IMG/VR virus record: IMGVR_UViG_3300045972_000138
Location: 124,001 to 188,000 of that record
Reading direction: 5' to 3' (one strand)
DNA: 64,000 nucleotides
Numbering within the stretch: the stretch's first letter is position 1; every line of letters starts with the position of its first letter. The position numbers and the translations under genes were made by a program. The notes beneath the pieces were generated by a model. It did no database searches. It had not been told where the DNA came from and worked only from the letters and a program-made list of their open reading frames with translations. Of this stretch, positions 9,863-59,527 are shown piece after piece.

Positions 9863-10140
9863 TGAGCGGACAGCTGGAGCCGGGATGCCTGGCTGTAGTC
9901 ATTAAGTCAGTAGAGGGTGCATCTGTGGGTAAGATTGTGCAATGTGTTAAGATACAAGGCGAGCATTCGCTGTATGGTACCATTTGGCGAGTTAGATCGC
10001 AGAGCACAATTGTTACAGAGTACGGCGGCGTGGGTAACGAAGCAGATTGCCCTGCTAAATGGCTTAAAAAGATAGAGCCGGGTTCGGATTTGTTAAACAA
10101 GAAAGTTATAACAAAAAAAGACGACGAGTTAGTAGATTAA
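9862..10140 (+). CDS. Hypothetical protein (SH3/KOW-like start)
   Basis: Coupled ORF (TAATG overlap); LEPGCLAVVI...VGKIVQCV pattern. Confidence 0.6.
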   Translation: MSGQLEPGCLAVVIKSVEGASVGKIVQCVKIQGEHSLYGTIWRVRSQSTIVTEYGGVGNEADCPAKWLKKIEPGSDLLNKKVITKKDDELVD

Positions 10141-10153
10141 ATCTAAATACAAT

Positions 10154-11728
10154 ATGACAAACAACAGAGTAAACTTTACAGAGCGCCATCTTCACGGTGG
10201 TTGGGCAAAATATCTACCAGCTATTAGCGGTTTCTACACTACACACCTAGGTAAGGATCTTGCAGACCCTACCTTTATTCCGCCAGATCGCGTACCTAAG
10301 GGATTTGAATTTGGAATGCAAGGTATTAATTTCTTTAACGAAGAAGATAGTTATTACAATTACAAATTCGGTCTATACTCGGCAGGTCATGCAGAACGCA
10401 ACTTAGCAAAATGCAATGCTAGAGAACCGATGATACATAATAGAGATCGTAACAAAACCATTCTTATTGGTGACTCAGGGGGTTTTCAGATTGCAACAGG
10501 TGTTATTAAGGTAGATTGGAAGACTGTTATGACACCGGCAGGCGACAAGTTACGCGAAGAAATCTTACGCTACTTAGAGCATACGGCAGACTGGTCAATG
10601 ACATTAGACGTACCTGCATTCGCAGCAGTACCGCCACTTAGCGAAAAGACGGGTCTAACAAAGTTCTCTGACTGCTTAGATGTATCCGAGCATAATCTAA
10701 AATACTTTATGGAACACCGTATTCCGGGTAAAACAAAATTCTTGAATGTATTATCGGGCACAGATGAGGCTACTTCTAAAGAGTGGTATGAACGAGTCGT
10801 ACCTTATAGTATGCCAGATGCAGTAGAAGCGATGGGATACACACGCGATCGTACACTAGAAGGGTGGGCCTTTGCCGGTATTAATATGAAGAATATGCCG
10901 TGCGTACTAAACAGACTATTAGACCTGCGCGACGATAATTTACTTGCCGATAAAGATTGGATTCACTTCCTAGGCATTGGTAGACTAGATTGGGCTTGCT
11001 ACCTGACATCAATTGAACGTGCATTGCGTAAGCATTATAATCCTAATATCAACATTAGTTTTGATGCTGCATCACCATTTGTTGCAGCAGGAGGTTATGC
11101 ATTATCTTATAATTACAATAAGTTTAGCGAAACTCAGTTAACATATGCAATGGGCCGTGGCGTAGATAATAAGGATTTGAAAGGCTCGACAGAAGCAATG
11201 CCTTTCCAGGGCCCGATTAATGACCGCTTAACAGTTGGCGATATGTGTGTTATGGGTCCAACTGATTTAAACAAGCACGGCAAAGTCGGTAATACAAGTT
11301 GGGACACCACATCGTATGCATTAGTTATGGCACACAATGTTCATAACCATATTCAGGCTATTCAGGAAGTAAATAGATTAGCAGACTTAGAATACTCAAG
11401 AGTACCGGAATTAGATATTAGTACTTGGAGTATTAAACCCGGTGGTAAAACTAAGGCCAAGCCGAAAAGTGTGCATATACCTAATAAGATAATTTATTTC
11501 AATCATTTTGTAAATCGTGTGTTAGATCCTGCAACAAAAAACCCGCGCCAACTGATAGAAGATAATATAGGATTCTTAGATCATATTAGCTTTAGTAGCA
11601 AAGCCCCTAAGAAAGTAGAAACAACCTTTGGTGATATGTGGGAAGTAATTGATGACGAAGTTGACCTGCCCGACATAGACGATTTAGCTGTTGAAGATAA
11701 CGACACATTAGCAAACGATGCAGGTTGA
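10154..11728 (+). CDS. dpdA: TGT-fold guanine transglycosylase, DpdA-like (7-deazaguanine DNA insertion)
   Basis: GDSGGFQ, SMTLDVP, IHFLG, SFDAASP and HN motifs of the TGT family; QueD-like and QueE genes lie nearby. Confidence 0.75.
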   Translation: MTNNRVNFTERHLHGGWAKYLPAISGFYTTHLGKDLADPTFIPPDRVPKGFEFGMQGINFFNEEDSYYNYKFGLYSAGHAERNLAKCNAREPMIHNRDRNKTILIGDSGGFQIATGVIKVDWKTVMTPAGDKLREEILRYLEHTADWSMTLDVPAFAAVPPLSEKTGLTKFSDCLDVSEHNLKYFMEHRIPGKTKFLNVLSGTDEATSKEWYERVVPYSMPDAVEAMGYTRDRTLEGWAFAGINMKNMPCVLNRLLDLRDDNLLADKDWIHFLGIGRLDWACYLTSIERALRKHYNPNINISFDAASPFVAAGGYALSYNYNKFSETQLTYAMGRGVDNKDLKGSTEAMPFQGPINDRLTVGDMCVMGPTDLNKHGKVGNTSWDTTSYALVMAHNVHNHIQAIQEVNRLADLEYSRVPELDISTWSIKPGGKTKAKPKSVHIPNKIIYFNHFVNRVLDPATKNPRQLIEDNIGFLDHISFSSKAPKKVETTFGDMWEVIDDEVDLPDIDDLAVEDNDTLANDAG

Positions 11729-37329: not shown

Positions 37330-37377
37330 TTGACTGCCCCTAAGGCCCGTGTTACAATAATATGTAACGCGGGCTTT
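37330..37377 (+). promoter_or_regulatory. Sigma70 promoter inside a 12-bp hairpin
   Basis: TTGACT-N17-TACAAT; GCCCGTGTTACA/TGTAACGCGGGC. Confidence 0.7.
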
Positions 37378-37395
37378 ATTCTATTTAAGGTATAT

Positions 37396-38589
37396 ATGGA
37401 AATCAATAATGTAAAAATGTGGGTAGGTGATATGGAAGTTGAAGAAGCTGCTATTCAGCAGATTATGAATATTTCCCAATTGCCTATTCTTGCCGGACAT
37501 ATGGCTATTATGCCAGACGTTCATATGGGCAAGGGTGCAACAGTTGGTTCTGTTATTCCTACACGTTCCGCTATTATTCCTGCCGCAGTAGGTGTGGATA
37601 TTGGTTGCGGTATGATTGCTGCAATGACAAACCTTAAGGCAGAAGATCTTCCAACATCATTGTTCTCCTTGCGTAATGCAATTGAACGTGATGTACCTGT
37701 AGGCTTCAACGAGCACGACAAGGGTATCCCTTCTGTGTCGGGTCCTTATGCAGATATCCTGCGTAAGAATCTACGCAAGACAATGGATGACTTCGATACA
37801 CTAACATTGAAGAAGAATTTGGGTCGTGCTGACGAAAAGAAGATTGCACGCCAGATTGGTACGCTAGGTGGCGGTAACCACTTTATCGAAATTTGTCTTG
37901 ATACACAAAATCGTGTGTGGATTATGCTGCACTCTGGATCACGTGGCATCGGTAACCAAATTGGTACAGTTGCAATTGAACTGGCAAAGGAACAGGCTGC
38001 AAAGCGTGCATGGGGTCTCCCAGATCAGGATCTTGCTTGGTTGGATGAAGGCACACCGGAATTCGAAGCCTACATTGAAGCTATGCATTGGGCGCAGGAT
38101 TATGCACGTTTCAATCGCGACACAATGATGAACTTGGTTGTGGCAGCAATGCTGCGTAAGTTTCCTACAATGAAGATTTTGGGCGAAGTGGTAAACTGCC
38201 ATCACAACTTTACAAGCCTGGAAGAACACTTTGGTACAAAGATGTGGATTACTCGTAAGGGTGCTGTATCTGCTAAACAAGGGCAAATGGGTATTATTCC
38301 TGGTTCGATGGGTGCTAAGTCGTTTATTGTGCAAGGCAAGGGTAATCACGATTCGTACTGCTCTTGCTCACACGGCGCAGGCCGCAAAATGAGCCGTAAT
38401 CAGGCGAAAAAACTGTTCGACGTTGCAGCTATGGAAGCGCAGACGCAAGGCATCGAGTGCCGCAAGGACTCGGGTGTTATTGACGAGATTCCTGCAGCAT
38501 ACAAAGACATCGATCAAGTTATGGCAGCACAATCTGAATTGGTTGATGTAGTGCATACGCTGAAGCAGGTGCTCTGCGTTAAAGGTTAA
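37396..38589 (+). CDS. rtcB: RtcB 3'-phosphate/5'-OH RNA ligase
   Basis: MPDVH.G.G..VG, GVDIGCG, GTLGGGNHFIE, LHSGSRG, HHN, RKGA, PGSMG, HGAGR and E.P.AYK motifs; ATG 37396. Confidence 0.95.
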   Translation: MEINNVKMWVGDMEVEEAAIQQIMNISQLPILAGHMAIMPDVHMGKGATVGSVIPTRSAIIPAAVGVDIGCGMIAAMTNLKAEDLPTSLFSLRNAIERDVPVGFNEHDKGIPSVSGPYADILRKNLRKTMDDFDTLTLKKNLGRADEKKIARQIGTLGGGNHFIEICLDTQNRVWIMLHSGSRGIGNQIGTVAIELAKEQAAKRAWGLPDQDLAWLDEGTPEFEAYIEAMHWAQDYARFNRDTMMNLVVAAMLRKFPTMKILGEVVNCHHNFTSLEEHFGTKMWITRKGAVSAKQGQMGIIPGSMGAKSFIVQGKGNHDSYCSCSHGAGRKMSRNQAKKLFDVAAMEAQTQGIECRKDSGVIDEIPAAYKDIDQVMAAQSELVDVVHTLKQVLCVKG

Positions 38590-49557: not shown

Positions 49558-50742
49558 ATGCCAATCAATATCTCTGGTGATACATATCTAAGCTTCGTTA
49601 AAGTAGGTACTGTATCGATACCTCCGGTTGCAAGTTTCACTAGTACACCGGTATCCGGGAATGTCCCATTTAATGTAACATTTACTGATACATCAACCAA
49701 CTATCCTACAAGTTGGTTGTGGCATTTTGGCGATGGAACAACATCAACAGCAAGAAATCCTACACATACCTATACTACACAAGGTACATACAGCCCAACA
49801 TTAACAGCTACAAATTCGTCAGGTAGCGGTACAGGCGGCGGTGGGTCTATTACAGCAAACCCTGCTGTGTTTGCTGCCAGCGCAACTATTCTTACTGGTT
49901 ACATACTTGGAAACTGGTTCTCTAGTAGCTACACAAATGGCAAATTTGTTATAGTTGACTATGGTAGTGCGAATAGTTATTATTCATCCGATAACGGATC
50001 ATCGTGGACATTAGGTAATACAGGTGCGTTACACGGTATTCGTGGACTATCACATGGTGCATATTATATGGCCGGTGTCCAGGCGAATAATGGGAATACA
50101 AATGTTGGATACTACAGTGGTGATGGCACAAACTGGTATACATTGACATTACCATCCGTACAACAATGGTGGGGTGCAGTATATGGCAATGGTGGATATG
50201 TATTTTATGGATCTGTTACGGGTGGGCAAATTGCGCTATCGGGCGATTTAGGCAGTTTTTCAATGATATCAACAGGTGTTTCATCGGCATATACTAATGC
50301 ATACTTCGGTAATGGTATATATATGTTATGCACTTATGTTGGTGCTCTTGTCATGACTAGTAATGATGGTGGACAAACCTGGACAAGGCATAATACACCA
50401 GTCCCATTCTATAGTGTGGCATACGGTAATGGCGTATGGGTAGGTACAACGGGCGGCATATCTGCTACTGTGTATACCAGCACTGATAATGGTGTGACAT
50501 GGACAACACACATAAATGCAATGCCGACCAACTCCGGATGGCGCGCAACAACATACGGCAATGGGGTCTTTGTATCAGTAGCAGACAACGGTGGCGGTTT
50601 AGGTAATGCTGCATACAGTACCAATGGCGTAAGTTGGACACTGATTGGCAATATGGATAGATCAGGTTGGGCAAGTCTAATATATGCAAATGGTACATTT
50701 ATTACAACGTGCGGCGGTACAGAGCTTGCTAAGGTAATTTAA
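49558..50742 (+). CDS. PKD domain + beta-propeller (BNR-like) virion protein
   Basis: One PKD repeat, then repeated (YG)NG.(F/Y)V...S.DG..W blades; ATAAATA upstream. Confidence 0.75.
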   Translation: MPINISGDTYLSFVKVGTVSIPPVASFTSTPVSGNVPFNVTFTDTSTNYPTSWLWHFGDGTTSTARNPTHTYTTQGTYSPTLTATNSSGSGTGGGGSITANPAVFAASATILTGYILGNWFSSSYTNGKFVIVDYGSANSYYSSDNGSSWTLGNTGALHGIRGLSHGAYYMAGVQANNGNTNVGYYSGDGTNWYTLTLPSVQQWWGAVYGNGGYVFYGSVTGGQIALSGDLGSFSMISTGVSSAYTNAYFGNGIYMLCTYVGALVMTSNDGGQTWTRHNTPVPFYSVAYGNGVWVGTTGGISATVYTSTDNGVTWTTHINAMPTNSGWRATTYGNGVFVSVADNGGGLGNAAYSTNGVSWTLIGNMDRSGWASLIYANGTFITTCGGTELAKVI

Positions 50743-50807
50743 TAGGTTGACTAGAGCATAATTGCTCTGTATAATAAAGGCAAGTCCACTAACTATACAG
50801 AGTGATT

Positions 50808-51188
50808 ATGGAAACTAAAGATTTACACACCAAAGAAGACGCACTGGAGTTTGCAGAGAAGATGCACAATGACGATAATGCTGTTGACATTGCAAAAACT
50901 GCTGATGGTCTGTTTCGTGTGCGTTGGATTAAGAACAAAAAGTACACAACGTACGACGGCAAAGAATTCACTGATGAAGTTTGGATGACAGAGAAAGAAG
51001 AACTTATTTGCATCCAAGATCTAACCGAAGCGCACGCCAAAAATATCATTCGTATGATGTTGCGTAATAGCCGTGAAACAAATCAGGCAGCGACAGCAAT
51101 GCTCGAAAGCTTGTCTGCACTTGCAGATGTGTTTGCTACTAGCAACGAAGTTGAGATTCCCGAATCCAGTAATCACGTGTTGCATTGA
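50808..51188 (+). CDS. Hypothetical protein
   Basis: Sigma70 promoter TTGACT...TATAAT upstream. Confidence 0.7.
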   Translation: METKDLHTKEDALEFAEKMHNDDNAVDIAKTADGLFRVRWIKNKKYTTYDGKEFTDEVWMTEKEELICIQDLTEAHAKNIIRMMLRNSRETNQAATAMLESLSALADVFATSNEVEIPESSNHVLH

Positions 51189-51337
51189 CGTGATAAATAA
51201 TAGTGCGTATAATGCATTAAAAGGATAAATATGGACACAATTGAACACATACAACTTTTGATTGCAGAATTATGGACCAATTGGGATTTTGTGGCACCCG
51301 TGCTAGTCCCTATTGCATATTTTCTTAACTAATAACC

Positions 51338-51412
51338 CTGGCGTTCGTTCAACGGATAGGACATCTTTCTTCTAAAGAGATAATAGTGGTTCGATTCCAC
51401 TACGCCGGACCA
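51338..51412 (+). tRNA. tRNA-Arg(UCU)
   Basis: Acceptor CTGGCGT/ACGCCGG, anticodon loop CT-TCT-AA, T-loop TTCGATT, encoded CCA. Confidence 0.92.
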
Positions 51413-51437
51413 ATTTTTAAACCACCAAGGACTTAAA

Positions 51438-51662
51438 ATGGAAATGACTAAAGTGTATGCCGCTCCCATTCTTGCAGAAGAAATGATTGCTTTGCGTGCA
51501 ATCGACGCGTCTAACGCAGAACTTCGCGCACGGAATGAGGCACGCCTTTTTGAATTCAAGGAGTCGATGGGTATCAAGTATCTGTTGCATCCCGACAACG
51601 CACCAAAGCGTCAAGAATATGTTCACGTGCTGACGCACAAAAAAGAAACTATCAACGAGTAA
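51438..51662 (+). CDS. Hypothetical protein
   Basis: AAGGA SD; MG.KYLLHP motif. Confidence 0.7.
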   Translation: MEMTKVYAAPILAEEMIALRAIDASNAELRARNEARLFEFKESMGIKYLLHPDNAPKRQEYVHVLTHKKETINE

Positions 51663-51665
51663 TAC

Positions 51666-51866
51666 GTGAACGACTTAGTTACGCTGAAAAACATTCTAGC
51701 CGTTTTAATTGAAAACGGCGTACACAACGAAGTAACACAGCTCGATAATGCTGTGCTCTTCGAGGGTGTTCCGCAGAATGTAATATACAAGGATGATTTG
51801 GTTGCAGCAGGTGCAACTTATGATTCAAACTTCGAAGCCTGGATGTTTTGGGGCAACGAAGAGTAA
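51666..51866 (+). CDS. Hypothetical protein
   Basis: GTG start, GAG SD. Confidence 0.5.
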   Translation: MNDLVTLKNILAVLIENGVHNEVTQLDNAVLFEGVPQNVIYKDDLVAAGATYDSNFEAWMFWGNEE

Positions 51867-51910
51867 AGCACGCAACTCTGATAAATAACATTATTGGAGT
51901 CGAATGCTTT

Positions 51911-52468
51911 ATGATATGTGAACATTGTTTAAAAGAATATACAAATAAATCCGGATATTCTAACCACATCAGGCGCTGCCCATCTAACCCGAATCGGGTA
52001 ATGGAGACAATGTCCCCCGAAGGTCGACTTAAAATAAGTAAGTCATCAACCGATTACAATAAGATAAAGTGGGCAGATCCTGTTATACGAGCAAAACACA
52101 AGCAGTCAATGAAAGATGCCGTAAAGAATAATCCAGATTCTTACACATCATCTAATCGTGGAAGAACTAAACAAATAATTGTTGATGGTATTAAATTACA
52201 AGGGCAATGGGAAGTAGATTTTTATAATTGGGCAAAAGAAAAAGGATTGAGCCCAGAAAGACCAACTATAGCATTTAAGTATGAGTGGAATGGTGAAAGA
52301 TTTTATCATCCAGATTTTTATATACCATCACTAGATTTATACGTAGAAGTGAAGGGTTATGAAACAGATAGGGATAGAGCAAAATGGTCGCAATTTCCGG
52401 GTAAGTTGCGTATAATAAAAGCTGCAGAGATAAAACAGATTAGGCAAGGGTGCTTTGAGCGAGTTTAG
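51911..52468 (+). CDS. PD-(D/E)xK endonuclease with N-terminal zinc finger (homing-type)
   Basis: CEHC...H...C zinc finger; WE, Y.PDFY and YVEVKG motifs; last codons overlap the tRNA. Confidence 0.75.
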   Translation: MICEHCLKEYTNKSGYSNHIRRCPSNPNRVMETMSPEGRLKISKSSTDYNKIKWADPVIRAKHKQSMKDAVKNNPDSYTSSNRGRTKQIIVDGIKLQGQWEVDFYNWAKEKGLSPERPTIAFKYEWNGERFYHPDFYIPSLDLYVEVKGYETDRDRAKWSQFPGKLRIIKAAEIKQIRQGCFERV

Positions 52469-52533
52469 CATAAAGGTAGTGCCGAGAACTCATAATTCTT
52501 AAGGTCCGGGTTCGATCCCCGGGGCTCGCACCA
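52459..52533 (+). tRNA. tRNA with CAU anticodon (elongator Met, or Ile2 if lysidine-modified)
   Basis: Acceptor GCGAGTT/GGCTCGC, loop CT-CAT-AA, T-loop TTCGATC, CCA. Confidence 0.9.
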
Positions 52534-52565
52534 AAGCATCTTTCCCTAATCTTAGAAAGACACAC

Positions 52566-52772
52566 ATGGCAGAAATCAAACTAACAAGCGTATGGGCAGT
52601 TGACATTATTGAATCTGAGCGCGGTTGGGGTTCTAAGGTCGACGAAACAAAACTTTTCGAAACACAGGAAGAAGCTGTGAAGTTTTCGAAAGATTACAAC
52701 GCAAAGTACAATACCGCTACAGAAGTACCGGATTGGTATATGTCTGCTCAGACTCCGTACAAGGTTAAATAA
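52566..52772 (+). CDS. Hypothetical protein
   Basis: IIESERGWG.K.DE motif. Confidence 0.7.
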   Translation: MAEIKLTSVWAVDIIESERGWGSKVDETKLFETQEEAVKFSKDYNAKYNTATEVPDWYMSAQTPYKVK

Positions 52773-52773
52773 T

Positions 52774-53006
52774 CAACTAAGGGCCGTGCTCTAACATTCC
52801 AACGATTCGCCTACTTCGGTATATTCCAATGGTACGCGGCTGTAAATATATGTTGGTTGATAAAGGTGGCTACCGCGGTAGAATACGAAGGTAGTTACAG
52901 GCAGTAGCATATCTTGATGACTGAGAATGTATTCTACCGAAAGGTCCCTATACAAAAGCTTTCATTCACCTCTATGCGTGACTGCCACCTATTCAAATAG
53001 TAGTTG
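52774..53006 (+). ncRNA. Unassigned structured intergenic RNA candidate
   Basis: About 230 nt without a long ORF, with several complementary segments (11-bp 52876-86/52929-39; 7-bp 52864-70/52984-90; 6-bp 52840-45/52895-900; 6-bp 52774-79/53001-06). Confidence 0.45.
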
Positions 53007-53038
53007 CTCTACTTCCTATTTAATGTATAATAGGAAGC

Positions 53039-53542
53039 ATGAAGCAAATACTTATACTCCTAGCAATGGTGCCTACAACGCTGTATAACACAGTATGCCC
53101 TAAAATGCCAAAGATGGATGCCGCACAAGAAAAGTGCTTGGCTACTACCATTTACGGAGAAGCACGTAGCGAACCCGAACAAGGGCAGGTTGCAGTGGCT
53201 TATACACTACTAAATCGCGCTAAAAATAAGACCATATGCGATGTTGCACTAGCACGCAAGCAATATAGTGTATTCAACAATAATCCTACATTACGAGCAA
53301 TAGCGACATCCTTGCACCTGTTACCAGAACAGAAAAATACAATTGACCAAAAGAGTTGGGAAATGGCTGTTCGTGTTTCAAGGATAGTTATGTATGGATT
53401 AACACCAGACCCAACTAACGGTGCTACTCATTACATTGCTGACAAGGTCATGAAAGTAAAAGGATACAAATATCCTAAGTGGTCAAAAGAATATAAGGTT
53501 GTGGCAACCATCAGCAACCATAAATTTTATAAAATCGGTTGA
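53039..53542 (+). CDS. Cell wall hydrolase, SleB/Hydrolase_2 family
   Basis: CLA..IYGEAR.EP..GQ.AVA...LNR, QYS, DPT.GATHY and HKFY motifs. Confidence 0.88.
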   Translation: MKQILILLAMVPTTLYNTVCPKMPKMDAAQEKCLATTIYGEARSEPEQGQVAVAYTLLNRAKNKTICDVALARKQYSVFNNNPTLRAIATSLHLLPEQKNTIDQKSWEMAVRVSRIVMYGLTPDPTNGATHYIADKVMKVKGYKYPKWSKEYKVVATISNHKFYKIG

Positions 53543-53586
53543 CTGGTACAGGTCGAACTCATACAATAAATAGATCTAAGGATTAT

Positions 53587-54468
53587 ATGTCTATTAAGTA
53601 CACCTTGTCGGTAATTATGTTGGCCTCACTGGTTGCTTGTGGAGGTGGGGGCGGAGGTAGCCCAGGCAGCGATGTTGCATCACCTACCAGATTACCAGTT
53701 AACGGTATTGTCTTATCTGCAGATCTGGCACCGGCCAATCTTAGTTGCACCGATTATGTAGAATACGATACAGGTAATGGCAGACTAACCAATAATGTCT
53801 GGAATAAACAAGCAGCAGGAACATTTCCGTACGCACAATGCATCACAGCTAAAGGACCACTATCAGCAAAGGTGTATGGATGGTCGTGGAATTGGCCTGC
53901 GAACTCTGGCAGTGTATTTGCCTATCCAGAAATAGTGTACGGATGGAAACCGTGGAACGGCGGATCGAGTAATGTACCTACATTGCCTATACGTGTTTCG
54001 GCAATTACCACTTTACGTTTCTCCTATGATCTTACTGTGACAACAAACGGTAAACACAATGTTTCTACATCTATGTGGTTAACAAGCAACGGTGCGACGA
54101 GTAATAAACCGGACTCGTCGCATATCACAACCGAGTTTATGATATGGACAGATGGATATGATTTTCATCCTGCTGGTAATTTGGCAGCAATATATACAAC
54201 CCAAACGGGAACACAATACGAGGTATGGTTTGATCCATATCAAACCGATGCATCGGGGCAGAATGCAAATGTATGGAAATATGTTGCGTACCGTGCAGTA
54301 GTTCCTAGTCTTACGCCAACTATCGATTTGAAATTAATACTGCAAGATGCAGTAACAAGAGGATATGTTTCGGCTACCGATTATGTATCTAATGTTGAAC
54401 TTGGAAACGAAATTATGTCCAGTTCAGGTCAAACGTGGATTAACTCTATTTCGTTAGTAGCACAATGA
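53587..54468 (+). CDS. GH12 endoglucanase-like lipoprotein
   Basis: LVA|CGGGG lipobox; NNVWN, AYP.IV.GW.PW, EFMIW (nucleophile) and ELGNEI (acid/base) motifs. Confidence 0.82.
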   Translation: MSIKYTLSVIMLASLVACGGGGGGSPGSDVASPTRLPVNGIVLSADLAPANLSCTDYVEYDTGNGRLTNNVWNKQAAGTFPYAQCITAKGPLSAKVYGWSWNWPANSGSVFAYPEIVYGWKPWNGGSSNVPTLPIRVSAITTLRFSYDLTVTTNGKHNVSTSMWLTSNGATSNKPDSSHITTEFMIWTDGYDFHPAGNLAAIYTTQTGTQYEVWFDPYQTDASGQNANVWKYVAYRAVVPSLTPTIDLKLILQDAVTRGYVSATDYVSNVELGNEIMSSSGQTWINSISLVAQ

Positions 54469-54771
54469 AACTTACAACATATCAAAAACACCTATTCTCC
54501 AGATTCAAACTTCGCGGTGACTATGTCACTTGGTGTTTTAATTCTAAAGGGTGGTTGCGTATTCATCGATTCATTATCCGCTGGCGTCTAGTTGACATCA
54601 ACGCCGTAAGCTGTGCTATAATACACTCAGCAGTGTGAGTGCAGTCCTATATAGTAGGCATACAAATAAGTCCTACTATATTTTATGCAGATAATGCTTG
54701 CTAGAGTCATAAATAAGTGCTACAATAAGCACTTAGCAAAACAAATAGTTGATCGCAACTGTTTGTGGTAA

Positions 54772-54782
54772 GTTCTTTAACA
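54772..54782 (+). promoter_or_regulatory. boxA-like antitermination element in the tRNA-array leader
   Basis: GTTCTTTAACA versus the rrn boxA consensus TGCTCTTTAACA, 6 nt before tRNA-Leu. Confidence 0.45.
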
Positions 54783-54788
54783 AAATAT

Positions 54789-54875
54789 GCGAGTGTGGCG
54801 AAATAGGTAGACGCAACAGACTTAAAATCTGTCGGGGGCAACTTCATGCCGGTTCGATTCCGGCCACTCGCACCA
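54789..54875 (+). tRNA. tRNA-Leu(UAA)
   Basis: GCGAGTG/CACTCGC acceptor, CT-TAA-AA loop, long variable arm, T-loop, CCA. Confidence 0.95.
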
Positions 54876-54883
54876 TAGTTTAT

Positions 54884-54965
54884 GTCCCTGTCGGTGGAGA
54901 GCGACACCTCCGCGCTTAACGGCAATGCAGAAATGCAAAGGATACGAAAGTATCAAGGGACTCCA
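54884..54965 (+). ncRNA. tRNA-sized, CCA-ending structured RNA with probable pseudoknot
   Basis: GTCCCT/AGGGAC closing stem plus T-CCA; GTCG/CGAC hairpin; two GAAA-tetraloop hairpins. Confidence 0.55.
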
Positions 54966-54972
54966 ATTTTAA

Positions 54973-55026
54973 GGGATACTTACAGCAATTTTAATTCACC
55001 GTAAATGAAACCAAAAAGGTATCCTG
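54973..55026 (+). ncRNA. Mini-RNA carrying an isolated anticodon-like stem-loop (GUA)
   Basis: GGATAC/GTATCC outer stem, TTACAGCAA linker, TTCA-ccGTAaa-TGAA inner hairpin. Confidence 0.45.
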
Positions 55027-55030
55027 TTTA

Positions 55031-55105
55031 GCCCTTGTAGCAGAGTGGTAATGCACGCGCCTTGTAAGCGCGGGATCTGGTGTTCGATTCACCACGAGGG
55101 CACCA
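55031..55105 (+). tRNA. tRNA-Thr(UGU)
   Basis: GCCCTTG/CGAGGGC acceptor, CGCGC-ctTGTaa-GCGCG, T-loop, CCA. Confidence 0.93.
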
Positions 55106-55195
55106 TATTAGAATGCACTAACTGAGTACAAGGCTCAGCGTGCGAATTCAGTAACTAAGCCTCAAGAGGAAGCTATAGTGCATTCTAATATGGTG
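55101..55195. repeat. ACCATAT...ATATGGT hairpin 1 (20-bp perfect inverted repeat)
   Basis: CACCATATTAGAATGCACTA (55101-20) / TAGTGCATTCTAATATGGTG (55176-95). Confidence 0.95.
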
Positions 55196-55302
55196 TGTTG
55201 ATCGTTAAATCAAAAAGTAAAGCGAAGTACAAGCTAGCCAATAGACCCGCGAACGTACTTAGAATCGTTCATGACAGTGAAAGCCTGTAAGGGGAGATTA
55301 AC

Positions 55303-55371
55303 ATACCATATTAGAACACACTACGACTCTAACGAGGGCTGGTTCACCGGTAGTGTGTTCTAATATGGTAT
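55303..55371. repeat. ACCATAT...ATATGGT hairpin 2 (22-bp perfect inverted repeat)
   Basis: ATACCATATTAGAACACACTAC / GTAGTGTGTTCTAATATGGTAT. Confidence 0.95.
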
Positions 55372-55444
55372 ACCGATAGCCCAAAGATAAGAGGCAAGTA
55401 TAATTACTGACAGTGCAGGTTAGATTCCTGTTCGGATACTACCA
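55367..55444 (+). pseudogene. Degenerate tRNA-like unit
   Basis: GGTAT(A)CCGA/TCGGATACT-ACCA stem, GCC/GGC D-like arm, CAGG-TTAGATT-CCTG T-like arm; no canonical anticodon arm. Confidence 0.55.
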
Positions 55445-55585
55445 TATTAAACTACATTCGTTGATCGGTGAGCCCAGGGCAGATCCGCAAATGTCGAAGT
55501 GTTGTTACACACAGTTTCGGTCCTTGCCATATAGTGCTTGGTATCGGGTAAGACGGTTTAATTCCGCAGTGTAGTTTAATATGGT
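55441..55585. repeat. ACCATAT...ATATGGT hairpin 3 (18 bp, one G-U)
   Basis: ACCATATTAAACTACATT / AGTGTAGTTTAATATGGT. Confidence 0.92.
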
Positions 55586-55702
55586 GATGTAATGTCCTCG
55601 CAAGGGACTGTGGCAGAGCAACGCGGATCGTTATACGGCAATGCTCAAGAGAATGCAACCACATGGGGCAAGAGTAAGTGAACGTGAGTAACCGATTACC
55701 TC

Positions 55703-55829
55703 TACCATATCAATCCGCAAAGCTCTTGCGACGGGGCTTTACAGGACGGGAATTGACCCGAAACGTGTCGCAGCGTTGGCATCTGGTAAGGATGCATAGC
55801 CTGAATTAACAGGGCGGATTGATATGGTG
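55703..55829. repeat. ACCATAT...ATATGGT hairpin 4 (16 bp)
   Basis: TACCATATCAATCCGC / GCGGATTGATATGGTG. Confidence 0.92.
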
Positions 55830-56240
55830 TGCTAAGTTAAGTGCCTTAAACTGAAAGAGAATGAAAAGTAGAATTGCAGCTAATGTAGCCTGGCCAGGTA
55901 CGGCATTAGACGTTCTAGTTAGTAGATTTCTGGAGGGGTAGTTTAGTGTAATAGGAGCACGCAACCTTTATGGCGCCGAAGAACGGTGCGATACCGTGGC
56001 TATTAAAGGTGCTTAACTTAGATTTCCGAAGCTTGTAATCAAGCCTGACACGACAGCATAACGTGGGTTGGACCTTAGCCAAGTAAAAATATTAAGGTGC
56101 AGTATTGCCATGCATAGAAGTGTGATAGTTTACGGGGCGGAGTTCTTAAAACTACCCTGGTATGGTCCTAATCATTAGGCCAAAGAAAGTGTTGTTAACG
56201 ACACCAAAGTCATCCTAGACTGGAAAAACTAGGGTGCATA
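55826..56240 (+). ncRNA. About 415-nt multi-domain structured RNA candidate
   Basis: 16-bp long-range stem 55832-47/56006-21 enclosing a tRNA-like module; several short hairpins downstream; no ORF. Confidence 0.55.
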
Positions 56241-56254
56241 TATTTTAAAGATTT

Positions 56255-56443
56255 GCCTCAGTACCTCAGTGGATTTGTGATTGTACTACTTTAAAGGAAC
56301 GTTTAGTAGGGATTGCACTTTAAAGACGAATGCTTCTTCTTGCACAGATGCGCGATCTGGAATGGTTTTAGTTGAAGTCAATACTGTAGAGGGCCGGATT
56401 TCTAATCCGAAAGTCGGGGGTTCGATTCCTTCCTGCGGCACCA
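56255..56443 (+). tRNA. tRNA-Arg(UCU) interrupted by a ~112-nt insertion in the D-loop
   Basis: 5' part GCCTCAG-TA-CCTC-AGTGGAT (56255-74); 3' part (T)A-GAGG-G-CCGGA-TT TCT AA-TCCGA-AAGTC-GGGGG-TTCGATT-CCTTC-CTGCGGC-A-CCA (56387-443). Confidence 0.75.
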
Positions 56444-56513
56444 TATAGAAACACATTTCCGACAGTAGGCGGAGGTGACAATGTCCATTCGGGTGAATGT
56501 GTTTCTATATGGT
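56440..56513. repeat. ACCATAT...ATATGGT hairpin 5 (19 bp)
   Basis: ACCATATAGAAACACATTT / GAATGTGTTTCTATATGGT. Confidence 0.92.
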
Positions 56514-56620
56514 ATGAAGCGTACTGTAACACTTAGTGGGAAAGCGCCTTCTGTTGTATATGATTTAGCAACTCACCTCTGGTAAATCACGACAGGAGAA
56601 AGTTACAGCCATTTTTATTA

Positions 56621-56800
56621 TGGTAAATGCGGAGACTGATCCGCGAGTTAGGTTGCGTCACCGGGTGGCTTATTTTGCCAAGATCACATCAGATTGAGGC
56701 TACACTCCTACCGCGGAAATTGGGTGATGTCCGAGGGTCTGAAGCGTAAGATGAGTAGTAGGAAAATCTAAATAATGCAGGAGATCAGTACCTGTTACCA
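56621..56800 (+). ncRNA. Closed structured unit TGGTAA...TTACCA
   Basis: Nested stems ACTGATC/GATCAGT, AGATT/AATCT and TCCTAC/GTAGGA; CCATTTTTAT direct repeat at 56609 and 56798. Confidence 0.55.
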
Positions 56801-56804
56801 TTTT

Positions 56805-56943
56805 TATAGAAAGCTTCCTGAGTAGCTACACTGGAACAACTGAAATACTAATGCCAGCCCCGAAAAAAGTGGGAAAGTTTCTTAGGACCAGCCAGGAAGA
56901 GTAGGGCTACCACGAATTCGAGCGTCACAGGAAGCTTTCTATA
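56805..56943. repeat. Terminal 16-bp inverted repeat of the array
   Basis: TATAGAAAGCTTCCTG / CAGGAAGCTTTCTATA enclosing a GTAGC/GCTAC branched interior. Confidence 0.9.
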
Positions 56944-56955
56944 GATAAATACTGT

Positions 56956-57171
56956 ATGGCCACAATCAAGCGAAAATCTAAAATGACAGATGATGATTTC
57001 AGACGCGATTTCGAAGACAGTGTCATTATGGAAGAACTTGATTTTGATACCATACCAATGGAACTATTAGCAGAATTTGAAGCAATGTCTATACAGTCAA
57101 AAGGTATAGACCAGGATGTACAAGAACATATAGAAACTGAATTTGATCAATTACGTGACACCTATCTATAA
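56956..57171 (+). CDS. Small acidic late protein, leaderless
   Basis: ATAAATA (56945-51) 4 nt before ATG. Confidence 0.65.
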   Translation: MATIKRKSKMTDDDFRRDFEDSVIMEELDFDTIPMELLAEFEAMSIQSKGIDQDVQEHIETEFDQLRDTYL

Positions 57172-57386
57172 TGCTATTAAACATATTAAAACTCCTAGTG
57201 GTGGGCAAGCCAAAGGCCGCAACTAAAACGCCAAAGTACGAATCCTGGTACAATTCCGATATACGACTGTGGACTGCACAATTTAAAAATGATTCTGGTG
57301 ATCAGATTGGTAGTGCAGGATTTGGTGCCAACAAATCTTCAGCAATTGAAGATCTATTCTACCAAAACATAGACATACTAGAATAA
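57171..57386 (+). CDS. Hypothetical protein
   Basis: TAATG-coupled. Confidence 0.6.
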   Translation: MLLNILKLLVVGKPKAATKTPKYESWYNSDIRLWTAQFKNDSGDQIGSAGFGANKSSAIEDLFYQNIDILE

Positions 57387-57421
57387 TTGTGTTATACTAA
57401 CCACAACTAAGAAAGATTGCT

Positions 57422-57928
57422 ATGGACATTGTATACAAAGCGCGGGTATTTGCTACTGCTGCACACTACGCGGTTAAACAGGTGCGGAAGTACACTGGTG
57501 AACCTTACATCGTGCATCCAGCAGAAGTAGTTAACATTCTGTACAAATATGGTGCAACAGACGAAATGGCTGCTGCAGGATGGTTACACGACACAGTGGA
57601 AGACACTGGTGTCACAATCGATGTCATTTACTACGAATTTGGGCAAACCATCGGCGAATATGTGAATTGGTTGACTGACCAAACCAAGCCCGAAGATGGT
57701 AACCGTGCCGTACGAAAGAAGATGGATGCTGATCGTTTAGCACTGGCACCAGCCGAAGTGCAGACTGTAAAGTATGCTGACCTGATCTCCAATACCAGGT
57801 CCATTACTGAATATGATGCAGGTTTCGCTAAAACATATTTGGTTGAAAAGGCTTACCTGTTAAGCGTAATGACAAAGGGTAATCCGCACCTTTACGAACT
57901 TGCGATGAAGAATATTGTATCAGTCTAA
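57422..57928 (+). CDS. HD-domain (p)ppGpp hydrolase-like protein (small alarmone hydrolase, SpoT-HD/Mesh1 family)
   Basis: AH..Q.RK..GEPYI.HP..V, A.WLHDTVEDT and VK.AD..SN motifs. Confidence 0.88.
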   Translation: MDIVYKARVFATAAHYAVKQVRKYTGEPYIVHPAEVVNILYKYGATDEMAAAGWLHDTVEDTGVTIDVIYYEFGQTIGEYVNWLTDQTKPEDGNRAVRKKMDADRLALAPAEVQTVKYADLISNTRSITEYDAGFAKTYLVEKAYLLSVMTKGNPHLYELAMKNIVSV

Positions 57929-58108
57929 GGTACTCTATGAAATACGCTAAAATTGCGGTTGGAATCCTATTTGTGTTAGTGCTAGTCAAAGGTCTTCTGT
58001 TTATCTCTAGTGAAGAGAACAGTATTAGACTGAATACTGACTGGGGCATCGCAAAAGATCATCCAATAAAATAATTGACTTTGTTTAAATTACTGCTATA
58101 ATACATAT

Positions 58109-59527
58109 ATGACATACCAACTTATTAAAGAAATCGCATCTGATAACTCCAAGCTTCACAAGGAAGCAGTTATCAAGCGCGAAGCACTTGCAAACAATAG
58201 CGATTTCTTTGCAGGCCTGCGCTATGCACTGGACAATATCGACACCTTCGGTGTTAAGAAGGTTCCAGAACGCAGTGGGCCCGACGGCCCTGGGTTGCCG
58301 TTTATTGGATTTGCTGCATTAGCGAACCAACTCATTGAACGCAATATTACTGGCGGCGCTGCATTGGATGCAATTGAAAAAGGTATGCGTCTTGCAACCA
58401 ACGATGAGTGGAATGGCTGGTATCGTCTCATTCTGATTAAAGATTTGAAGGCAGGCTTCTCCGAGAGTACTGTTAACAAGGCAATCAAAGATACCCACCC
58501 GCAATGGGTAATTCCAACTACGCCGTATATGCGCTGCACATTGCCAGCCAAGTCCAACATGGAAGACTGGGATTGGAGCAAAGGTATTTACAGCCAAACC
58601 AAGGCCGATGGTATGTTTGCTAATGTGAACATCCGTCAAGATGGTTACTTGTGGGTTACTAGCCGTGGTGGTACATTGTTTCCACCCGGTAGCCTGGGCA
58701 TCGAAGATCAGCTTGTCGCAGTGTTCGATAAGGGCACACAGACGCACGGCGAACTTACTGTCTATATCGATGGTGTGTTGCAAGCTCGCGAAATCGGCAA
58801 TGGTATCTTCAACAGTCTGCTTAAAGGCGGATCGTTGGAAGCAAACCAGAAGGTGCATTACGATTGCTGGGATCAGATTCCAATTGCCAAAGCACTACCT
58901 AAGGGCAAGTACGAGATTGGATACGAAAAGCGGTTTACTGTTTTAAAGATTCAGGTTGATACTGCAAAGAAAGATTCAGTAACTGCACACTTGGATCCAA
59001 TTGAGCTTACCGAAACGCGCATTGTGTTCTCTATGTCTGAAGCTGTAGTGCATTACAAGGAACACCGTGCTCGCAAGTTGGAAGGCACAATCCTTAAGGC
59101 ACCTACTACAATTTGGAAGGATGGCACATCCAAAGACCAAGTTAAGATGAAGGAAGAGATTGACGTTGAGTTGAAGGTAATTGGCTTCAATCCTGGCAAG
59201 GGCAAGAATGCAAACACATTTGGTTCTATCCAGTGTGCAAGCGAATGCGACTTGCTGGAAGTAAATGTGTCTGGTATGAGCGATGATATGCGTGCTGCTA
59301 TCCACGCAGACCGTCTGAACTGGCCCGGTAAGATTATTACTGGTCGTTCCAACTCGCTGCTGGCTCCAAGCAAAGGTAAGAAGAATGGTAAGTGGTCTCT
59401 GTTCCTCCCGCGCTTGATTGAAGAGCGTATGGACAAGACTGTTGCCGATACATTGGAACAGATCCAAGCTCAGTTTGCTGCTGCTGAAGCTGCTGTTAAA
59501 TCTACCGAAGAGGATAGCGAAGAATGA
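58109..59527 (+). CDS. ATP-dependent DNA ligase (T4 gp30-like)
   Basis: Adenylation motif QTKADG, HGEL, EG.ILK, W..G.S....K.K and SLFLP motifs; leaderless after TTGACT-N16-TATAAT. Confidence 0.9.
   Translation: MTYQLIKEIASDNSKLHKEAVIKREALANNSDFFAGLRYALDNIDTFGVKKVPERSGPDGPGLPFIGFAALANQLIERNITGGAALDAIEKGMRLATNDEWNGWYRLILIKDLKAGFSESTVNKAIKDTHPQWVIPTTPYMRCTLPAKSNMEDWDWSKGIYSQTKADGMFANVNIRQDGYLWVTSRGGTLFPPGSLGIEDQLVAVFDKGTQTHGELTVYIDGVLQAREIGNGIFNSLLKGGSLEANQKVHYDCWDQIPIAKALPKGKYEIGYEKRFTVLKIQVDTAKKDSVTAHLDPIELTETRIVFSMSEAVVHYKEHRARKLEGTILKAPTTIWKDGTSKDQVKMKEEIDVELKVIGFNPGKGKNANTFGSIQCASECDLLEVNVSGMSDDMRAAIHADRLNWPGKIITGRSNSLLAPSKGKKNGKWSLFLPRLIEERMDKTVADTLEQIQAQFAAAEAAVKSTEEDSEE

What the first reader, a model, noticed from the sequence alone, without database searches (positions are those of the whole stretch)
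55826..56240. About 415-nt multi-domain RNA containing a nested tRNA-like module
Seen: 16-bp stem (55832-47/56006-21) encloses about 160 nt including GGTAGTT-TA-GTGT aatagga GCAC ... ACGG-TGCGATA-CCGT-GGCTATT (D- and T-arm-like). It is followed by hairpins at 56031-44, 56167-79, 56189-204 and 56214-33. Known: large ornate RNAs such as GOLLD occur in phage tRNA arrays. I could not find group I P7, group II domain V or RNase P signatures. Inference: a GOLLD-like or new large ncRNA class.
Basis: partly seen in the sequence, partly recalled or inferred. Interest (0 to 1): 0.6.

Follow-up and report, generated by a model that had tools for sequence, protein, structure and literature searches.

The report
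Modular structured RNAs in phage tRNA operon
The flagged stretch is not one giant RNA. It is two separate folded RNA modules forming the leader of an odd tRNA-like gene, inside a 1.9-kb hairpin-punctuated array of small structured RNAs in a freshwater giant phage; the modules are swapped between related phages and match no catalogued RNA family.

Summary
The window has 11 stems of 16 bp or more, 9 of them within 55100-56945, against 0-1 in shuffled sequence. The interval is not one conserved 415-nt RNA, and it matches no Rfam family, GOLLD and ROOL included.

It consists of two modules:
- D1 (55832-56021) is closed by a 16-bp stem. It has one known relative (97% identical). In an otherwise identical relative a different stem-closed module takes its place.
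- M2 (56021-56253) is conserved in three lineages, with 11 compensatory base pairs.

The "nested tRNA" inside D1 is not supported by tRNA models or by the minimum-energy fold. A genuine tRNA-like gene lies just downstream (56255-56443). It has a complete cloverleaf core, but a conserved, structured 114-nt insertion splits its D-loop.

All of this sits in the longest ORF-poor stretch of a 237-kb phage record. There, units ending in ACCA alternate with long perfect hairpins whose bases read ACCATAT...ATATGGT. I read this as a polycistronic tRNA-like operon with structured spacers and exchangeable modules. Expression and function were not tested. The phage also encodes RtcB and a Ro60-like protein.

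The parts
54789..54875 (+). tRNA-Leu(UAA), first gene of the array. A promoter-like site lies at 54698-54726.
   Evidence: ARAGORN and Rfam, 62.7 bits. Promoter scan, 9/12 with TG. The whole stretch 54603-54877 is 83.5% conserved in L023.
55031..55105 (+). tRNA-Thr(UGU). Its 3' ACCA is the first part of hairpin HP1.
55101..55195 (+). HP1: spacer hairpin with a 20-bp perfect stem and base ACCATAT...ATATGGT.
   Evidence: the repeat finder I5; stem count against shuffles.
55196..55305 (+). Unit A: a 110-nt RNA. Its ends can form a 9-bp acceptor-like stem followed by ACCA.
   Evidence: Read from the sequence; the repeat finder I3. Inference only.
55303..55371 (+). HP2: spacer hairpin with a 22-bp perfect stem.
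   Evidence: the repeat finder I4.
55372..55444 (+). Unit B: a 73-nt decayed tRNA-like unit with a T-arm-like hairpin, ending in ACCA.
   Evidence: Sequence. 83% conserved in L023 843-946, with a compensatory change in the end stem. Not detected by the tRNA models.
55441..55585 (+). HP3: module closed by a 16-bp stem, 113 nt inside.
   Evidence: the repeat finder I9. Its 5' part follows tRNA-Leu in L014 at 97% identity. Present in runs X3 and X8.
55586..55707 (+). Unit C: a 122-nt unit ending in ACCA.
   Evidence: Sequence; present in X3 contigs.
55704..55828 (+). HP4: module closed by a 15-16-bp stem, with four internal hairpins.
   Evidence: 85% identical to L017 241-368, with 3 compensatory pairs, 2 of them in the closing stem. 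Present in all four other freshwater runs laid.
55832..56021 (+). D1: module closed by a 16-bp stem, the first half of the finding. It behaves as an optional, exchangeable cassette.
   Evidence: z = -2.90. The only homolog is L024, at 97% identity. L023 and L025 are identical to L024 downstream but carry an HP6-like module at the same junction.
56021..56253 (+). M2: conserved structured leader, the second half of the finding. A long-range helix encloses 56021-56150, followed by hairpins at 56189-204 and 56214-33 and a U-rich tail.
   Evidence: RNAalifold on window, L024 and L017: 56 pairs, 11 of them with compensatory change. 81.5% identical to L017.
56255..56443 (+). tRNA-like gene (anticodon UCU in the window) whose D-loop is split by a 114-nt structured insertion (56273-56386). 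Acceptor 56255-61/56433-39; D stem 56264-67/56389-92; anticodon arm 56394-56410; T arm 56416-32; ACCA 56440-43.
   Evidence: RNAalifold on 4 lineages recovers all four cloverleaf helices plus the insertion hairpins. 95% of cells are paired against 36-50% when the partners are slid, and 6 pairs show compensatory change. The Rfam tRNA model gives only 26.5 bits for the 3' 70 nt. The base before the 5' end is U in all 4 lineages.
56440..56513 (+). HP5: spacer hairpin with an 18-bp perfect stem, starting in the ACCA of the tRNA-like gene.
   Evidence: the repeat finder I7. Homologous hairpins in L017, L015, L023 and L024 have stems of different sequence that are still paired.
56514..56620 (+). Unit E: a conserved ~105-nt segment after HP5.
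   Evidence: 87-88% identical to L015 and L017, 74% to L006 and L029. Present in X3 and X8.
56805..56943 (+). HP6: a ~140-nt stem-closed module that follows another ACCA (56798-56801).
   Evidence: RNAalifold on 5 sequences: 45 pairs, 19 with compensatory change. Homologs sit inside or directly upstream of permuted tmRNA genes in L041 and L042.

Best explanation
The finding covers the structured 5' leader of an atypical tRNA-like gene, inside a polycistronic array of tRNA and tRNA-like genes. The array spans about 54789-56945 on the + strand in a freshwater giant phage.

The leader is made of two independently evolving modules. D1 is a stem-closed cassette that relatives lack or replace with a different stem-closed module. 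M2 is a conserved multi-hairpin domain.

Throughout the array, units that end in ACCA alternate with long perfect hairpins. Each hairpin runs from the ACCA of one unit to the first base of the next. I infer that these hairpins are structured spacers. On this view they keep neighbouring units from misfolding and mark the sites where host RNase P, RNase III or E and 3' trimming enzymes cut the precursor into separate stable small RNAs. This would resemble the tRNA-region stable RNAs of phage T4 and the excised intervening segment of two-piece tmRNA genes.

Shown here: the stems, the covariation, the module swapping, the cloverleaf with its D-loop insertion, and the absence of known-family matches.

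Inferred: transcription as one precursor, the processing enzymes, and any downstream role such as tRNA mimicry or decoy for host tRNA-targeting defences.
For: - Non-coding setting: window 54469-57421 is the longest stretch of the 237-kb record without an ORF of 80 aa or more.
- Stems: 9 of the window's 11 stems of 16 bp or more lie here, against 0-1 in shuffles. The five ACCATAT...ATATGGT hairpins occur nowhere else in the genome, and each starts in an ACCA.
- Structure under selection: M2 has 11 compensatory pairs, the tRNA-like gene 6, HP6 19 and HP4 3.
- Modularity: L024 is identical to L023 and L025 over 426 nt downstream of the junction but has D1 where they have an HP6-like module. The order of modules differs in L017, L023, L014 and L006.
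- Spacer role: an HP6-like module fills the intervening segment between the CCA and the next 5' end of a permuted tmRNA gene in L041.
- RNase P context: U at position -1 and a 7-bp acceptor followed by ACCA in all four lineages.
- Known families: none match.
Against: - No expression data: no RNA run holds the stretch, so transcription and processing are unproven.
- Only 3-5 lineages are available per module, and they are related, so the covariation statistics are weak in the formal sense.
- D1 has only one near-identical homolog, so its internal fold is unsupported by covariation.
- Perfect 15-22-bp stems that bury the CCA could hinder tRNA-type 3' maturation rather than help it.
- Units B and C have poor acceptor stems.
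- The swapping of modules could equally reflect selfish DNA.
Confidence: 0.6

Rival explanations
1. Selfish or decaying DNA. On this reading the array is a graveyard of degenerate tRNA genes interspersed with palindromic, MITE-like elements. These elements would insert at or recombine through the ACCATAT/ATATGGT ends, and the RNAs would have no function of their own.
For: - The hairpin arms share a consensus resembling terminal inverted repeats.
- Module order and content differ between close relatives, with swaps at exact borders.
- Units B and C look like decayed tRNAs that the tRNA models miss.
- Homing-endonuclease-like genes and group I introns populate the same regions in relatives.
Against: - Internal helices and loops of HP6, HP4, M2 and the D-loop insertion are kept by compensatory changes, and some unpaired loops are invariant.
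- The interiors of the hairpins are unrelated to each other, unlike copies of a single MITE.
- The modules persist across several freshwater samples.
Confidence: 0.15
2. Y-RNA-like partners. The stem-closed modules (D1, HP4, HP6 and others) would be ligands of the phage's Ro60-like protein, acting with RtcB in RNA repair or in recruiting host exonucleases.
For: - The genome encodes a DUF2828+DUF7788 protein whose model matches only Ro60/TROVE structures in the top 9 PDB hits (E 1e-5 to 9e-4). After excluding DUF2828/DUF7788 clusters, 27 of its 30 nearest named Atlas clusters are TROVE.
- RtcB lies at window 37459-38586.
- Y RNAs are stem-closed RNAs with tRNA-like parts and occur in phages (PMC4201824, PMC12135203).
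- M2 begins with a CGAA-containing motif in the window and L017.
Against: - The Ro60-like gene is about 169 kb away, whereas known Y RNAs lie within 4 kb on the same strand (PMC4201824).
- That gene has its own 1.2-kb promoter-bearing non-coding stretch upstream, which contains a perfect GNCGAAN0-1G motif.
- The hairpin stems here are perfect, without the bulged helix that Ro60 binds.
- The CGAA of M2 is not kept in L024.
- No family, YrlA included, reached E 10 in this region.
Confidence: 0.1
3. One large multi-domain RNA of a GOLLD-like or new ornate class spanning 55826-56240.
For: - If RNase P cuts at 56254/56255 and the HP4 border is also cut, a ~425-nt leader (55829-56254) containing D1 and M2 would exist as one molecule.
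- It is structured and lies beside tRNAs, as GOLLD often does.
Against: - No GOLLD, ROOL or HEARO match at E up to 10.
- D1 and M2 do not co-occur in L017, L023 or L025.
- They show very different divergence from L024.
- No long-range pairing between D1 and M2 appears in the centroid fold.
- The whole-interval z-score is only -1.54.
Confidence: 0.05
4. The 114-nt D-loop insertion, and perhaps the other modules, are introns. They would be removed by cleavage and sealed by the phage RtcB ligase, giving a normal tRNA-Arg(UCU).
For: - The phage encodes RtcB, the tRNA-splicing-type ligase.
- A relative carries a group I intron at the same D-loop site of tRNA-Leu (48.4 bits).
- In the window and L024 the insertion borders can be drawn as helix, 3-nt bulge, 4-bp helix, 3-nt bulge, helix (read).
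- The insertion ends in G and follows a U in three of the four lineages.
Against: - No group I match in the window at E up to 10, and 114 nt is too short for a group I core.
- The central 4-bp helix of the bulge-helix-bulge drawing has a G-A mismatch in L017 and L015.
- No tRNA-intron endonuclease gene is in the record, and as far as I know bacteria lack one.
- The insertion's own hairpins and a 14-nt loop are conserved, which suggests it is retained and functional.
Confidence: 0.08

Closest known systems
Stable RNAs of the phage T4 tRNA region (species 1 and 2, rnaC/rnaD). This comparison rests on my own knowledge; I could not retrieve the literature here.
   Same: Small non-tRNA RNAs encoded among phage tRNA genes. 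They are co-transcribed with the tRNAs, have acceptor-like paired ends and CCA-type 3' ends, are released by tRNA-processing enzymes, and have no known function.
   Different: Here there are many more units. Long perfect spacer hairpins with a shared ACCATAT/ATATGGT base separate them. Whole modules are exchanged between relatives. No sequence similarity to the T4 RNAs was tested.
Intervening segment of permuted (two-piece) tmRNA genes (Rfam RF04321, RF01850)
   Same: A segment lying between a 3' CCA end and the 5' end of the next acceptor strand, which has to be excised. In L041 this segment is an HP6-like module homologous to window 56805-56943.
   Different: The window has no tmRNA: no ARAGORN or Rfam hit and no tag-like reading frame. 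D1 and M2 themselves have no homolog in the tmRNA loci.
Bacterial and phage Y RNAs (YrlA, Yrl1/2)
   Same: Stem-closed non-coding RNAs with tRNA-like hairpins. They occur in genomes that also encode Ro60 and RtcB.
   Different: The arm order differs (YrlA runs T, AS, D). There is no bulged Ro-binding helix. The array is not adjacent to the Ro60-like gene. No family, YrlA included, reached E 10 in this region.
GOLLD and ROOL large ornate RNAs
   Same: Found in phages and next to tRNAs, large and structured.
   Different: No covariance-model match. The interval is modular rather than a single conserved architecture.
tRNA genes with D-loop introns (archaeal bulge-helix-bulge introns; the group I intron in tRNA-Leu of L014)
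   Same: The D-loop of a tRNA-like gene is interrupted at the G19/A21 region.
   Different: No catalytic-intron signature, no conserved bulge-helix-bulge motif and no endonuclease gene. The insertion is conserved as a structured domain.

Membership tests
GOLLD / ROOL / HEARO (Rfam) | Match to the family covariance model | tested here: not met
   cmscan at gathering thresholds on the window, and at E up to 10 on 50500-58500. No such hit.
tRNA (RF00005): nested module in D1, 55935-56006 | Cloverleaf detectable by the tRNA covariance model or ARAGORN | tested here: not met
   No hit at E up to 10. ARAGORN finds none. The T-arm-like hairpin is not in the MFE or centroid fold.
tRNA: 56255-56443 | 7-bp acceptor stem, discriminator and CCA | tested here: met
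   RNAalifold helix 1: 6 of 7 pairs in the window and L015, 7 of 7 in L017. ACCA is invariant.
tRNA: 56255-56443 | D stem with U8, A14, G18G19 and A21; T arm with a TTCGATT loop; 5-bp anticodon stem with a 7-nt loop | tested here: met
   D stem CCTC/GAGG and the T arm are invariant in 4 lineages. The anticodon arm is kept with one compensatory pair. The named bases were read from the alignment.
tRNA: 56255-56443 | Contiguous ~75-90-nt cloverleaf scoring above the Rfam gathering score (29 bits) | tested here: not met
A 114-nt insertion sits in the D-loop. The model aligns only 56371-56440, using a weaker local 5' strand, at 26.5 bits.
Group I intron (RF00028) | Match to the catalytic core model | tested here: not met
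   No hit in the window at E up to 10. The same model does hit L014 (48.4 bits) and L003 (50.4 bits).
Y RNA / YrlA | Encoded within about 4 kb of the Ro60 gene on the same strand | tested here: not met
   The Ro60-like gene is at G000 9689-11116 and the finding at G000 179826-180240.
Y RNA / YrlA | GNCGAAN0-1G motif next to the closing stem, and T, AS, D arm order | tested here: not met
   M2 starts with UCCGAAG in the window and L017, which fits only NCGAAG, and with CCUAAG in L024. The arm order does not match (PMC4201824).
tmRNA (standard or permuted) | tRNA-like domain plus a tag reading frame ending in a hydrophobic AA-type tail; a model match | tested here: not met
   ARAGORN on the window and the whole genome. 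Rfam gives only a 22.8-bit chance-level match, at 54818-55048. No tag-like frame in 54870-57000.
Polycistronic tRNA-type operon with processed spacers | Discrete 5' and 3' ends at the unit borders in RNA from infected cells | not testable with these tools
   No RNA run holds the stretch, and contigs cannot show RNA ends.

The most novel reading that the evidence does not exclude
The stem-closed modules (D1, HP3, HP4, HP6 and their relatives) would be a new class of autonomous, exchangeable RNA cassettes. They would occupy the junction between a 3' CCA and the next RNA's 5' end in the tRNA-like and tmRNA genes of freshwater phages. They would also have an activity of their own, such as self-processing, guiding the host processing enzymes, or binding the widespread phage Ro60-like protein. 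Alongside this, the downstream gene would be a working tRNA that carries a 114-nt accessory domain grafted onto its D-loop elbow.
Probability: 0.2. Interest if true: 0.8.

Novelty: new variant of a known kind. Interest (0 to 1): 0.55.

Why it matters
Giant phages carry large tRNA islands whose non-tRNA content is almost unstudied. This locus shows three things:
- Such an island can hold a dense, conserved and rapidly reshuffled set of structured RNA modules.
- These modules are invisible to Rfam, ARAGORN and the tRNA models.
- One of them is a tRNA-like gene with a large structured domain inserted in the D-loop, and another is a module shared with phage two-piece tmRNA genes.

If the modules are functional, they would add new RNA families and a new way of organising and processing phage small RNAs. 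They may also bear on the contest between phage tRNAs and host tRNA-cleaving defences, and on what the very common phage Ro60-like proteins bind. If they are only spacers and debris, the result is still useful as a caution against reading every stem-rich stretch near tRNAs as one 'ornate' RNA.

Tried and rejected
- Rfam at gathering thresholds and at E up to 10: only tRNAs and chance-level hits.
- INPHARED phages, blastn on 55000-56700: only an 80-nt tRNA match.
- IMG/VR pattern scans for the tRNA-like gene's invariant blocks, its T-arm plus hairpin start, and a D1 20-mer: all zero.
- GTDB genome scan for a D1 pattern: zero.
- nhmmer of D1 against the genome and all loci: only L024.
- nhmmer of the D-loop insertion: a single copy per genome.
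- More distant HD_4 neighbours (L019, L021, L033-36): synteny with the array is lost, or only HP6 remains.
- tmRNA reading of the window array: no tag frame.
- Archaeal-type splicing: no endonuclease gene in the record, and the bulge-helix-bulge drawing is not conserved.
- TROVE Pfam model on the genome: no hit. The Ro60 likeness came only from DUF2828, the Atlas search and the fold search.
- Sequencing runs: only DNA contigs, so nothing on expression.
The cloverleaf was assessed on the unjoined alignment instead.

Full report
SETTING. The window is bases 124001-188000 of a 237.6-kb IMG/VR virus record that CheckV estimates to be 62% complete. The source is a pond or freshwater metagenome. No cultured phage is close. 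The T4-type DNA ligase at 58109-59527 is at most 42% identical to any GenBank phage protein. The window carries four canonical tRNAs: Arg 51338, Met 52459, Leu 54789-54875 and Thr 55031-55105. Downstream of tRNA-Leu lies the longest stretch of the whole record without an ORF of 80 aa or more, 54469-57421. The finding (55826-56240) lies inside it.

THE OBSERVATION. The 16-bp closing stem (55832-47 with 56006-21; 2 G-U pairs) is real. I counted stems of at least 16 pairs, with at most 2 G-U and a loop of at most 250 nt, across the window. There are 11, and 9 of them lie in 55100-56945. Ten dinucleotide shuffles gave 0 or 1. The domain 55829-56024 folds with z = -2.90, and 0 of 200 shuffles fold as well. 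The whole 415-nt interval gives only z = -1.54 on the + strand and -0.52 on the - strand.

The one at 56167-79 is not conserved. The proposed nested tRNA-like module is not detected by ARAGORN or by the Rfam tRNA model at E up to 10. Its T-arm-like hairpin is replaced by a competing hairpin in the MFE and centroid folds. Rfam gives no GOLLD, ROOL, HEARO, group I, group II, RNase P or ribozyme hit in the region.

THE SURROUNDING ARRAY. Five long perfect hairpins share the base ACCATAT...ATATGGT:
- HP1, 55101-55195, 20 bp
- HP2, 55303-55371, 22 bp
- HP3, 55441-55585, 16 bp
- HP4, 55704-55828, 15 bp
- HP5, 56440-56513, 18 bp

Such hairpins occur nowhere else in the 237 kb. Each begins inside an ACCA that ends the preceding unit: tRNA-Thr, then units A to C, then the tRNA-like gene described below. 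A sixth stem-closed module, HP6 (56805-56943), also follows an ACCA. Each spacer between one 3' ACCA and the first base of the next unit is therefore a hairpin. Unit A can close a 9-bp acceptor-like stem. Unit B is a decayed tRNA-like unit whose end stem shows a compensatory change in L023.

HOMOLOGS. The ligase and the HD_4 protein (57422-57928) led to related metagenomic contigs. BLAST of 54600-57000 against them gave these matches:
- L024 is collinear with window 55842-56801 (81%).
- L017 matches HP4 (85%), 56021-56457 (81.5%), unit E and HP6.
- L023, L025, L026 and L027 match from 56122 or later, up to 56453.
- L015 matches 56259-56447.
- L006, L029, L019 and L021 match HP6.

The order of modules differs in every lineage. 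In four other freshwater runs laid at 80% likeness or more, HP3, unit C, HP4, the tRNA-like gene, unit E and HP6 are present. The bins covering 55906-56153 are empty in all four.

THE FINDING IS TWO MODULES.

D1 (55832-56021) has one homolog, L024, at about 97% identity: 6 substitutions. L024, L023 and L025 are identical over the 426 nt from the junction motif GATTTCC to the ACCA. Upstream of that junction L024 has D1, while L023 and L025 have an HP6-like module. L017 has yet another sequence there. D1 is therefore an optional cassette, exchanged exactly at a module border.

M2 (56021-56253) is shared by the window, the L024 group and L017. RNAalifold predicts 56 pairs, 11 of them with compensatory change. 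They include a long-range helix enclosing about 56021-56150 and the two 3' hairpins. M2 is much more diverged between the window and L024 than D1 is, so the region is a recombination mosaic.

THE REAL tRNA-LIKE ELEMENT. Immediately after M2, 56255-56443 is conserved in four lineages. RNAalifold, run without any constraint, recovers:
- a 7-bp acceptor stem (56255-61 with 56433-39);
- a D stem, CCTC/GAGG (56264-67 with 56389-92);
- an anticodon arm;
- a T arm with a TTCGATT loop and a 3' ACCA;
- two hairpin systems inside a 114-nt insertion (56273-56386) placed between G18G19 and A21 of the D-loop.

With the named structure, 95% of cells pair, against 36-50% when the partners are slid by 1-3 columns. 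Six pairs show double changes. One insertion hairpin keeps an invariant 14-nt loop while its stem covaries in two independent ways. U8, A14, G15/C48, G18G19 and A21 are all present, and the base before the 5' end is U in all four lineages (read). The anticodon differs between lineages: UCU in the window and L024, UUU in L015, AUU in L017.

The Rfam model sees only the 3' 70 nt, at 26.5 bits where the gathering score is 29. The insertion occurs once per genome.

In relative L014 the same D-loop site of tRNA-Leu holds a group I intron (48.4 bits, E 1.9e-11). The 114-nt insertion itself has no group I signature. A bulge-helix-bulge drawing of its borders is perfect only in the window and L024, and the record has no tRNA-intron endonuclease gene.

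OTHER MODULES ARE STRUCTURED RNAS TOO. HP6 has 45 predicted pairs, 19 with compensatory change, in five sequences. HP4 has 3 compensatory pairs in two sequences, two of them in the closing stem. A pattern taken from HP6 found two IMG/VR contigs. In L041 the HP6-like module is the intervening segment of a permuted tmRNA gene: it lies between the CCA of the acceptor piece and the 5' end of the coding piece. That gene scores 114.6 bits on RF04321 and 106.8 bits on RF01850, with tag ANDSTFAMAA. In L042 the module lies directly upstream of another permuted tmRNA (84.4 bits). The window itself has no tmRNA and no tag-like frame. This independently shows that these modules occupy the junction between a CCA and the next 5' end.

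GENOME CONTEXT. RtcB is encoded at window 37459-38586 (428 bits). A 475-aa DUF2828+DUF7788 protein at G000 9689-11116 is Ro60-like:
- After excluding DUF2828/DUF7788 clusters, 27 of the 30 nearest named Atlas clusters are TROVE plus vWA_Ro60.
- The AlphaFold model (pLDDT 67.7) has Ro60/TROVE structures as its top nine PDB matches, at E 1e-5 to 9e-4. One of them is a phage Ro60.

That gene lies 169 kb from the finding. It has its own roughly 1.2-kb promoter-bearing, apparently non-coding stretch upstream, which contains a motif fitting the YrlA GNCGAAN0-1G consensus (PMC4201824). That stretch is the likelier place for Y-like RNAs.

INTERPRETATION. The best-supported reading is a polycistronic tRNA-like operon. 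The finding would be the two-module leader of a tRNA-like gene with an expanded D-loop. The long hairpins and stem-closed modules would be structured spacers or cassettes at the unit borders.

Shown: the structure, the covariation, the modular exchange and the absence of family matches.

Inferred: co-transcription from the promoter-like site upstream of tRNA-Leu, cutting by RNase P and RNase III or E, and any role as tRNA mimic or decoy.

The rivals, scored in the Rival explanations section, are selfish palindromic elements among decayed tRNAs, Y-RNA-like ligands of the Ro60-like protein, a single ornate RNA, and RtcB-sealed introns. The closest known analogues are the T4 tRNA-region stable RNAs (from my own knowledge; the literature search found nothing) and the excised segment of two-piece tmRNA genes.

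VERDICT. The locus is a new variant of a known kind: phage tRNA-island small RNAs. It contains several uncatalogued, covariation-supported modules and an unusual tRNA-like gene. The main limits are the few lineages available, the lack of any expression data, and a host that remains unknown.

Noticed in passing
window 37459-38586 (+); hairpin 37341-37378: A full-length RtcB RNA ligase gene (Pfam 428 bits). A 16-bp hairpin lies about 80 nt upstream of it, one of only two long stems in the window outside the RNA array.
   Followed up: partly
G000:C1:9689-11116 (L037 1024-2451), outside the window: A 475-aa DUF2828+DUF7788 protein that is Ro60-like by fold: its top 9 PDB hits are all Ro60/TROVE. 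The word search scored 7981 related proteins at E 1e-5 or better, the listed ones all carrying the same two domains. The TROVE Pfam model itself does not hit it.
   Followed up: yes
G000:C1:8449-9688 (L040): A roughly 1.2-kb stretch upstream of the Ro60-like gene with two TTGACA-type promoter-like sites, terminator-like nested hairpins and a GCCGAAAG motif that fits the YrlA consensus. These are candidate Y-like RNAs. No Rfam hit.
   Followed up: partly
L014 841-1058 (tRNA-Leu split at 832-851 / 1086-1152): In a relative, tRNA-Leu(UAA) is interrupted in the D-loop, not the anticodon loop, by a group I intron of about 234 nt (RF00028 48.4 bits, just under the gathering score of 50). As far as I recall, group I introns in tRNA genes sit in the anticodon loop, so this site looks unusual.
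   Followed up: partly
L041 3880-4204; L042 1887-2104: Two IMG/VR phage contigs encode permuted (two-piece) tmRNAs of the betaproteobacterial type. An HP6-like structured module sits inside the intervening segment in L041 and just upstream of the gene in L042.
   Followed up: partly
L003 322-532: A group I intron (50.4 bits) in the more distant relative. L003 also has several non-coding stretches ending in CCACCA, with T-arm-like hairpins that the tRNA finders miss.
   Followed up: no
window 51848-52468 (+): A 206-aa ORF with a cysteine/histidine motif, lying between tRNA-Arg and tRNA-Met. It has only a weak DUF7487 hit and is possibly a homing-type endonuclease. L014 has a GIY-YIG-like ORF (my reading of its N-terminal sequence, not scanned) in its own tRNA region.
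   Followed up: partly
window 57422-57928 (+) and loci L033-L036: The HD_4 phosphohydrolase-like gene next to the array is very widespread: 3532 homologs at E 1e-10 or better. In other phages it sits beside AAA_33 kinase-like, Rnl1 ligase, metallophosphatase, RF-1-domain and DUF2828 genes. That neighbourhood suggests RNA repair.
   Followed up: partly
window 55194 joined to 55832 in run X3: One contig joins the end of HP1 directly to the start of D1, skipping 637 nt. This would be a variant lacking units A-C and HP2-HP4. Only 20 nt lie on the shorter side and both ends share ATATGGTG, so the evidence is weak.
   Followed up: no
window 56464-56525: Very high contig depth (about 590-1200) in runs X3 and X8 over the loop and 3' arm of HP5. 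A similar hairpin appears to exist in a much more abundant freshwater entity.
   Followed up: no
window 56394-56410 and homologs: The anticodon of the conserved tRNA-like gene differs between lineages (UCU, UUU, AUU) while the rest of the body is nearly invariant. The window already has a canonical tRNA-Arg(UCU) at 51338.
   Followed up: partly
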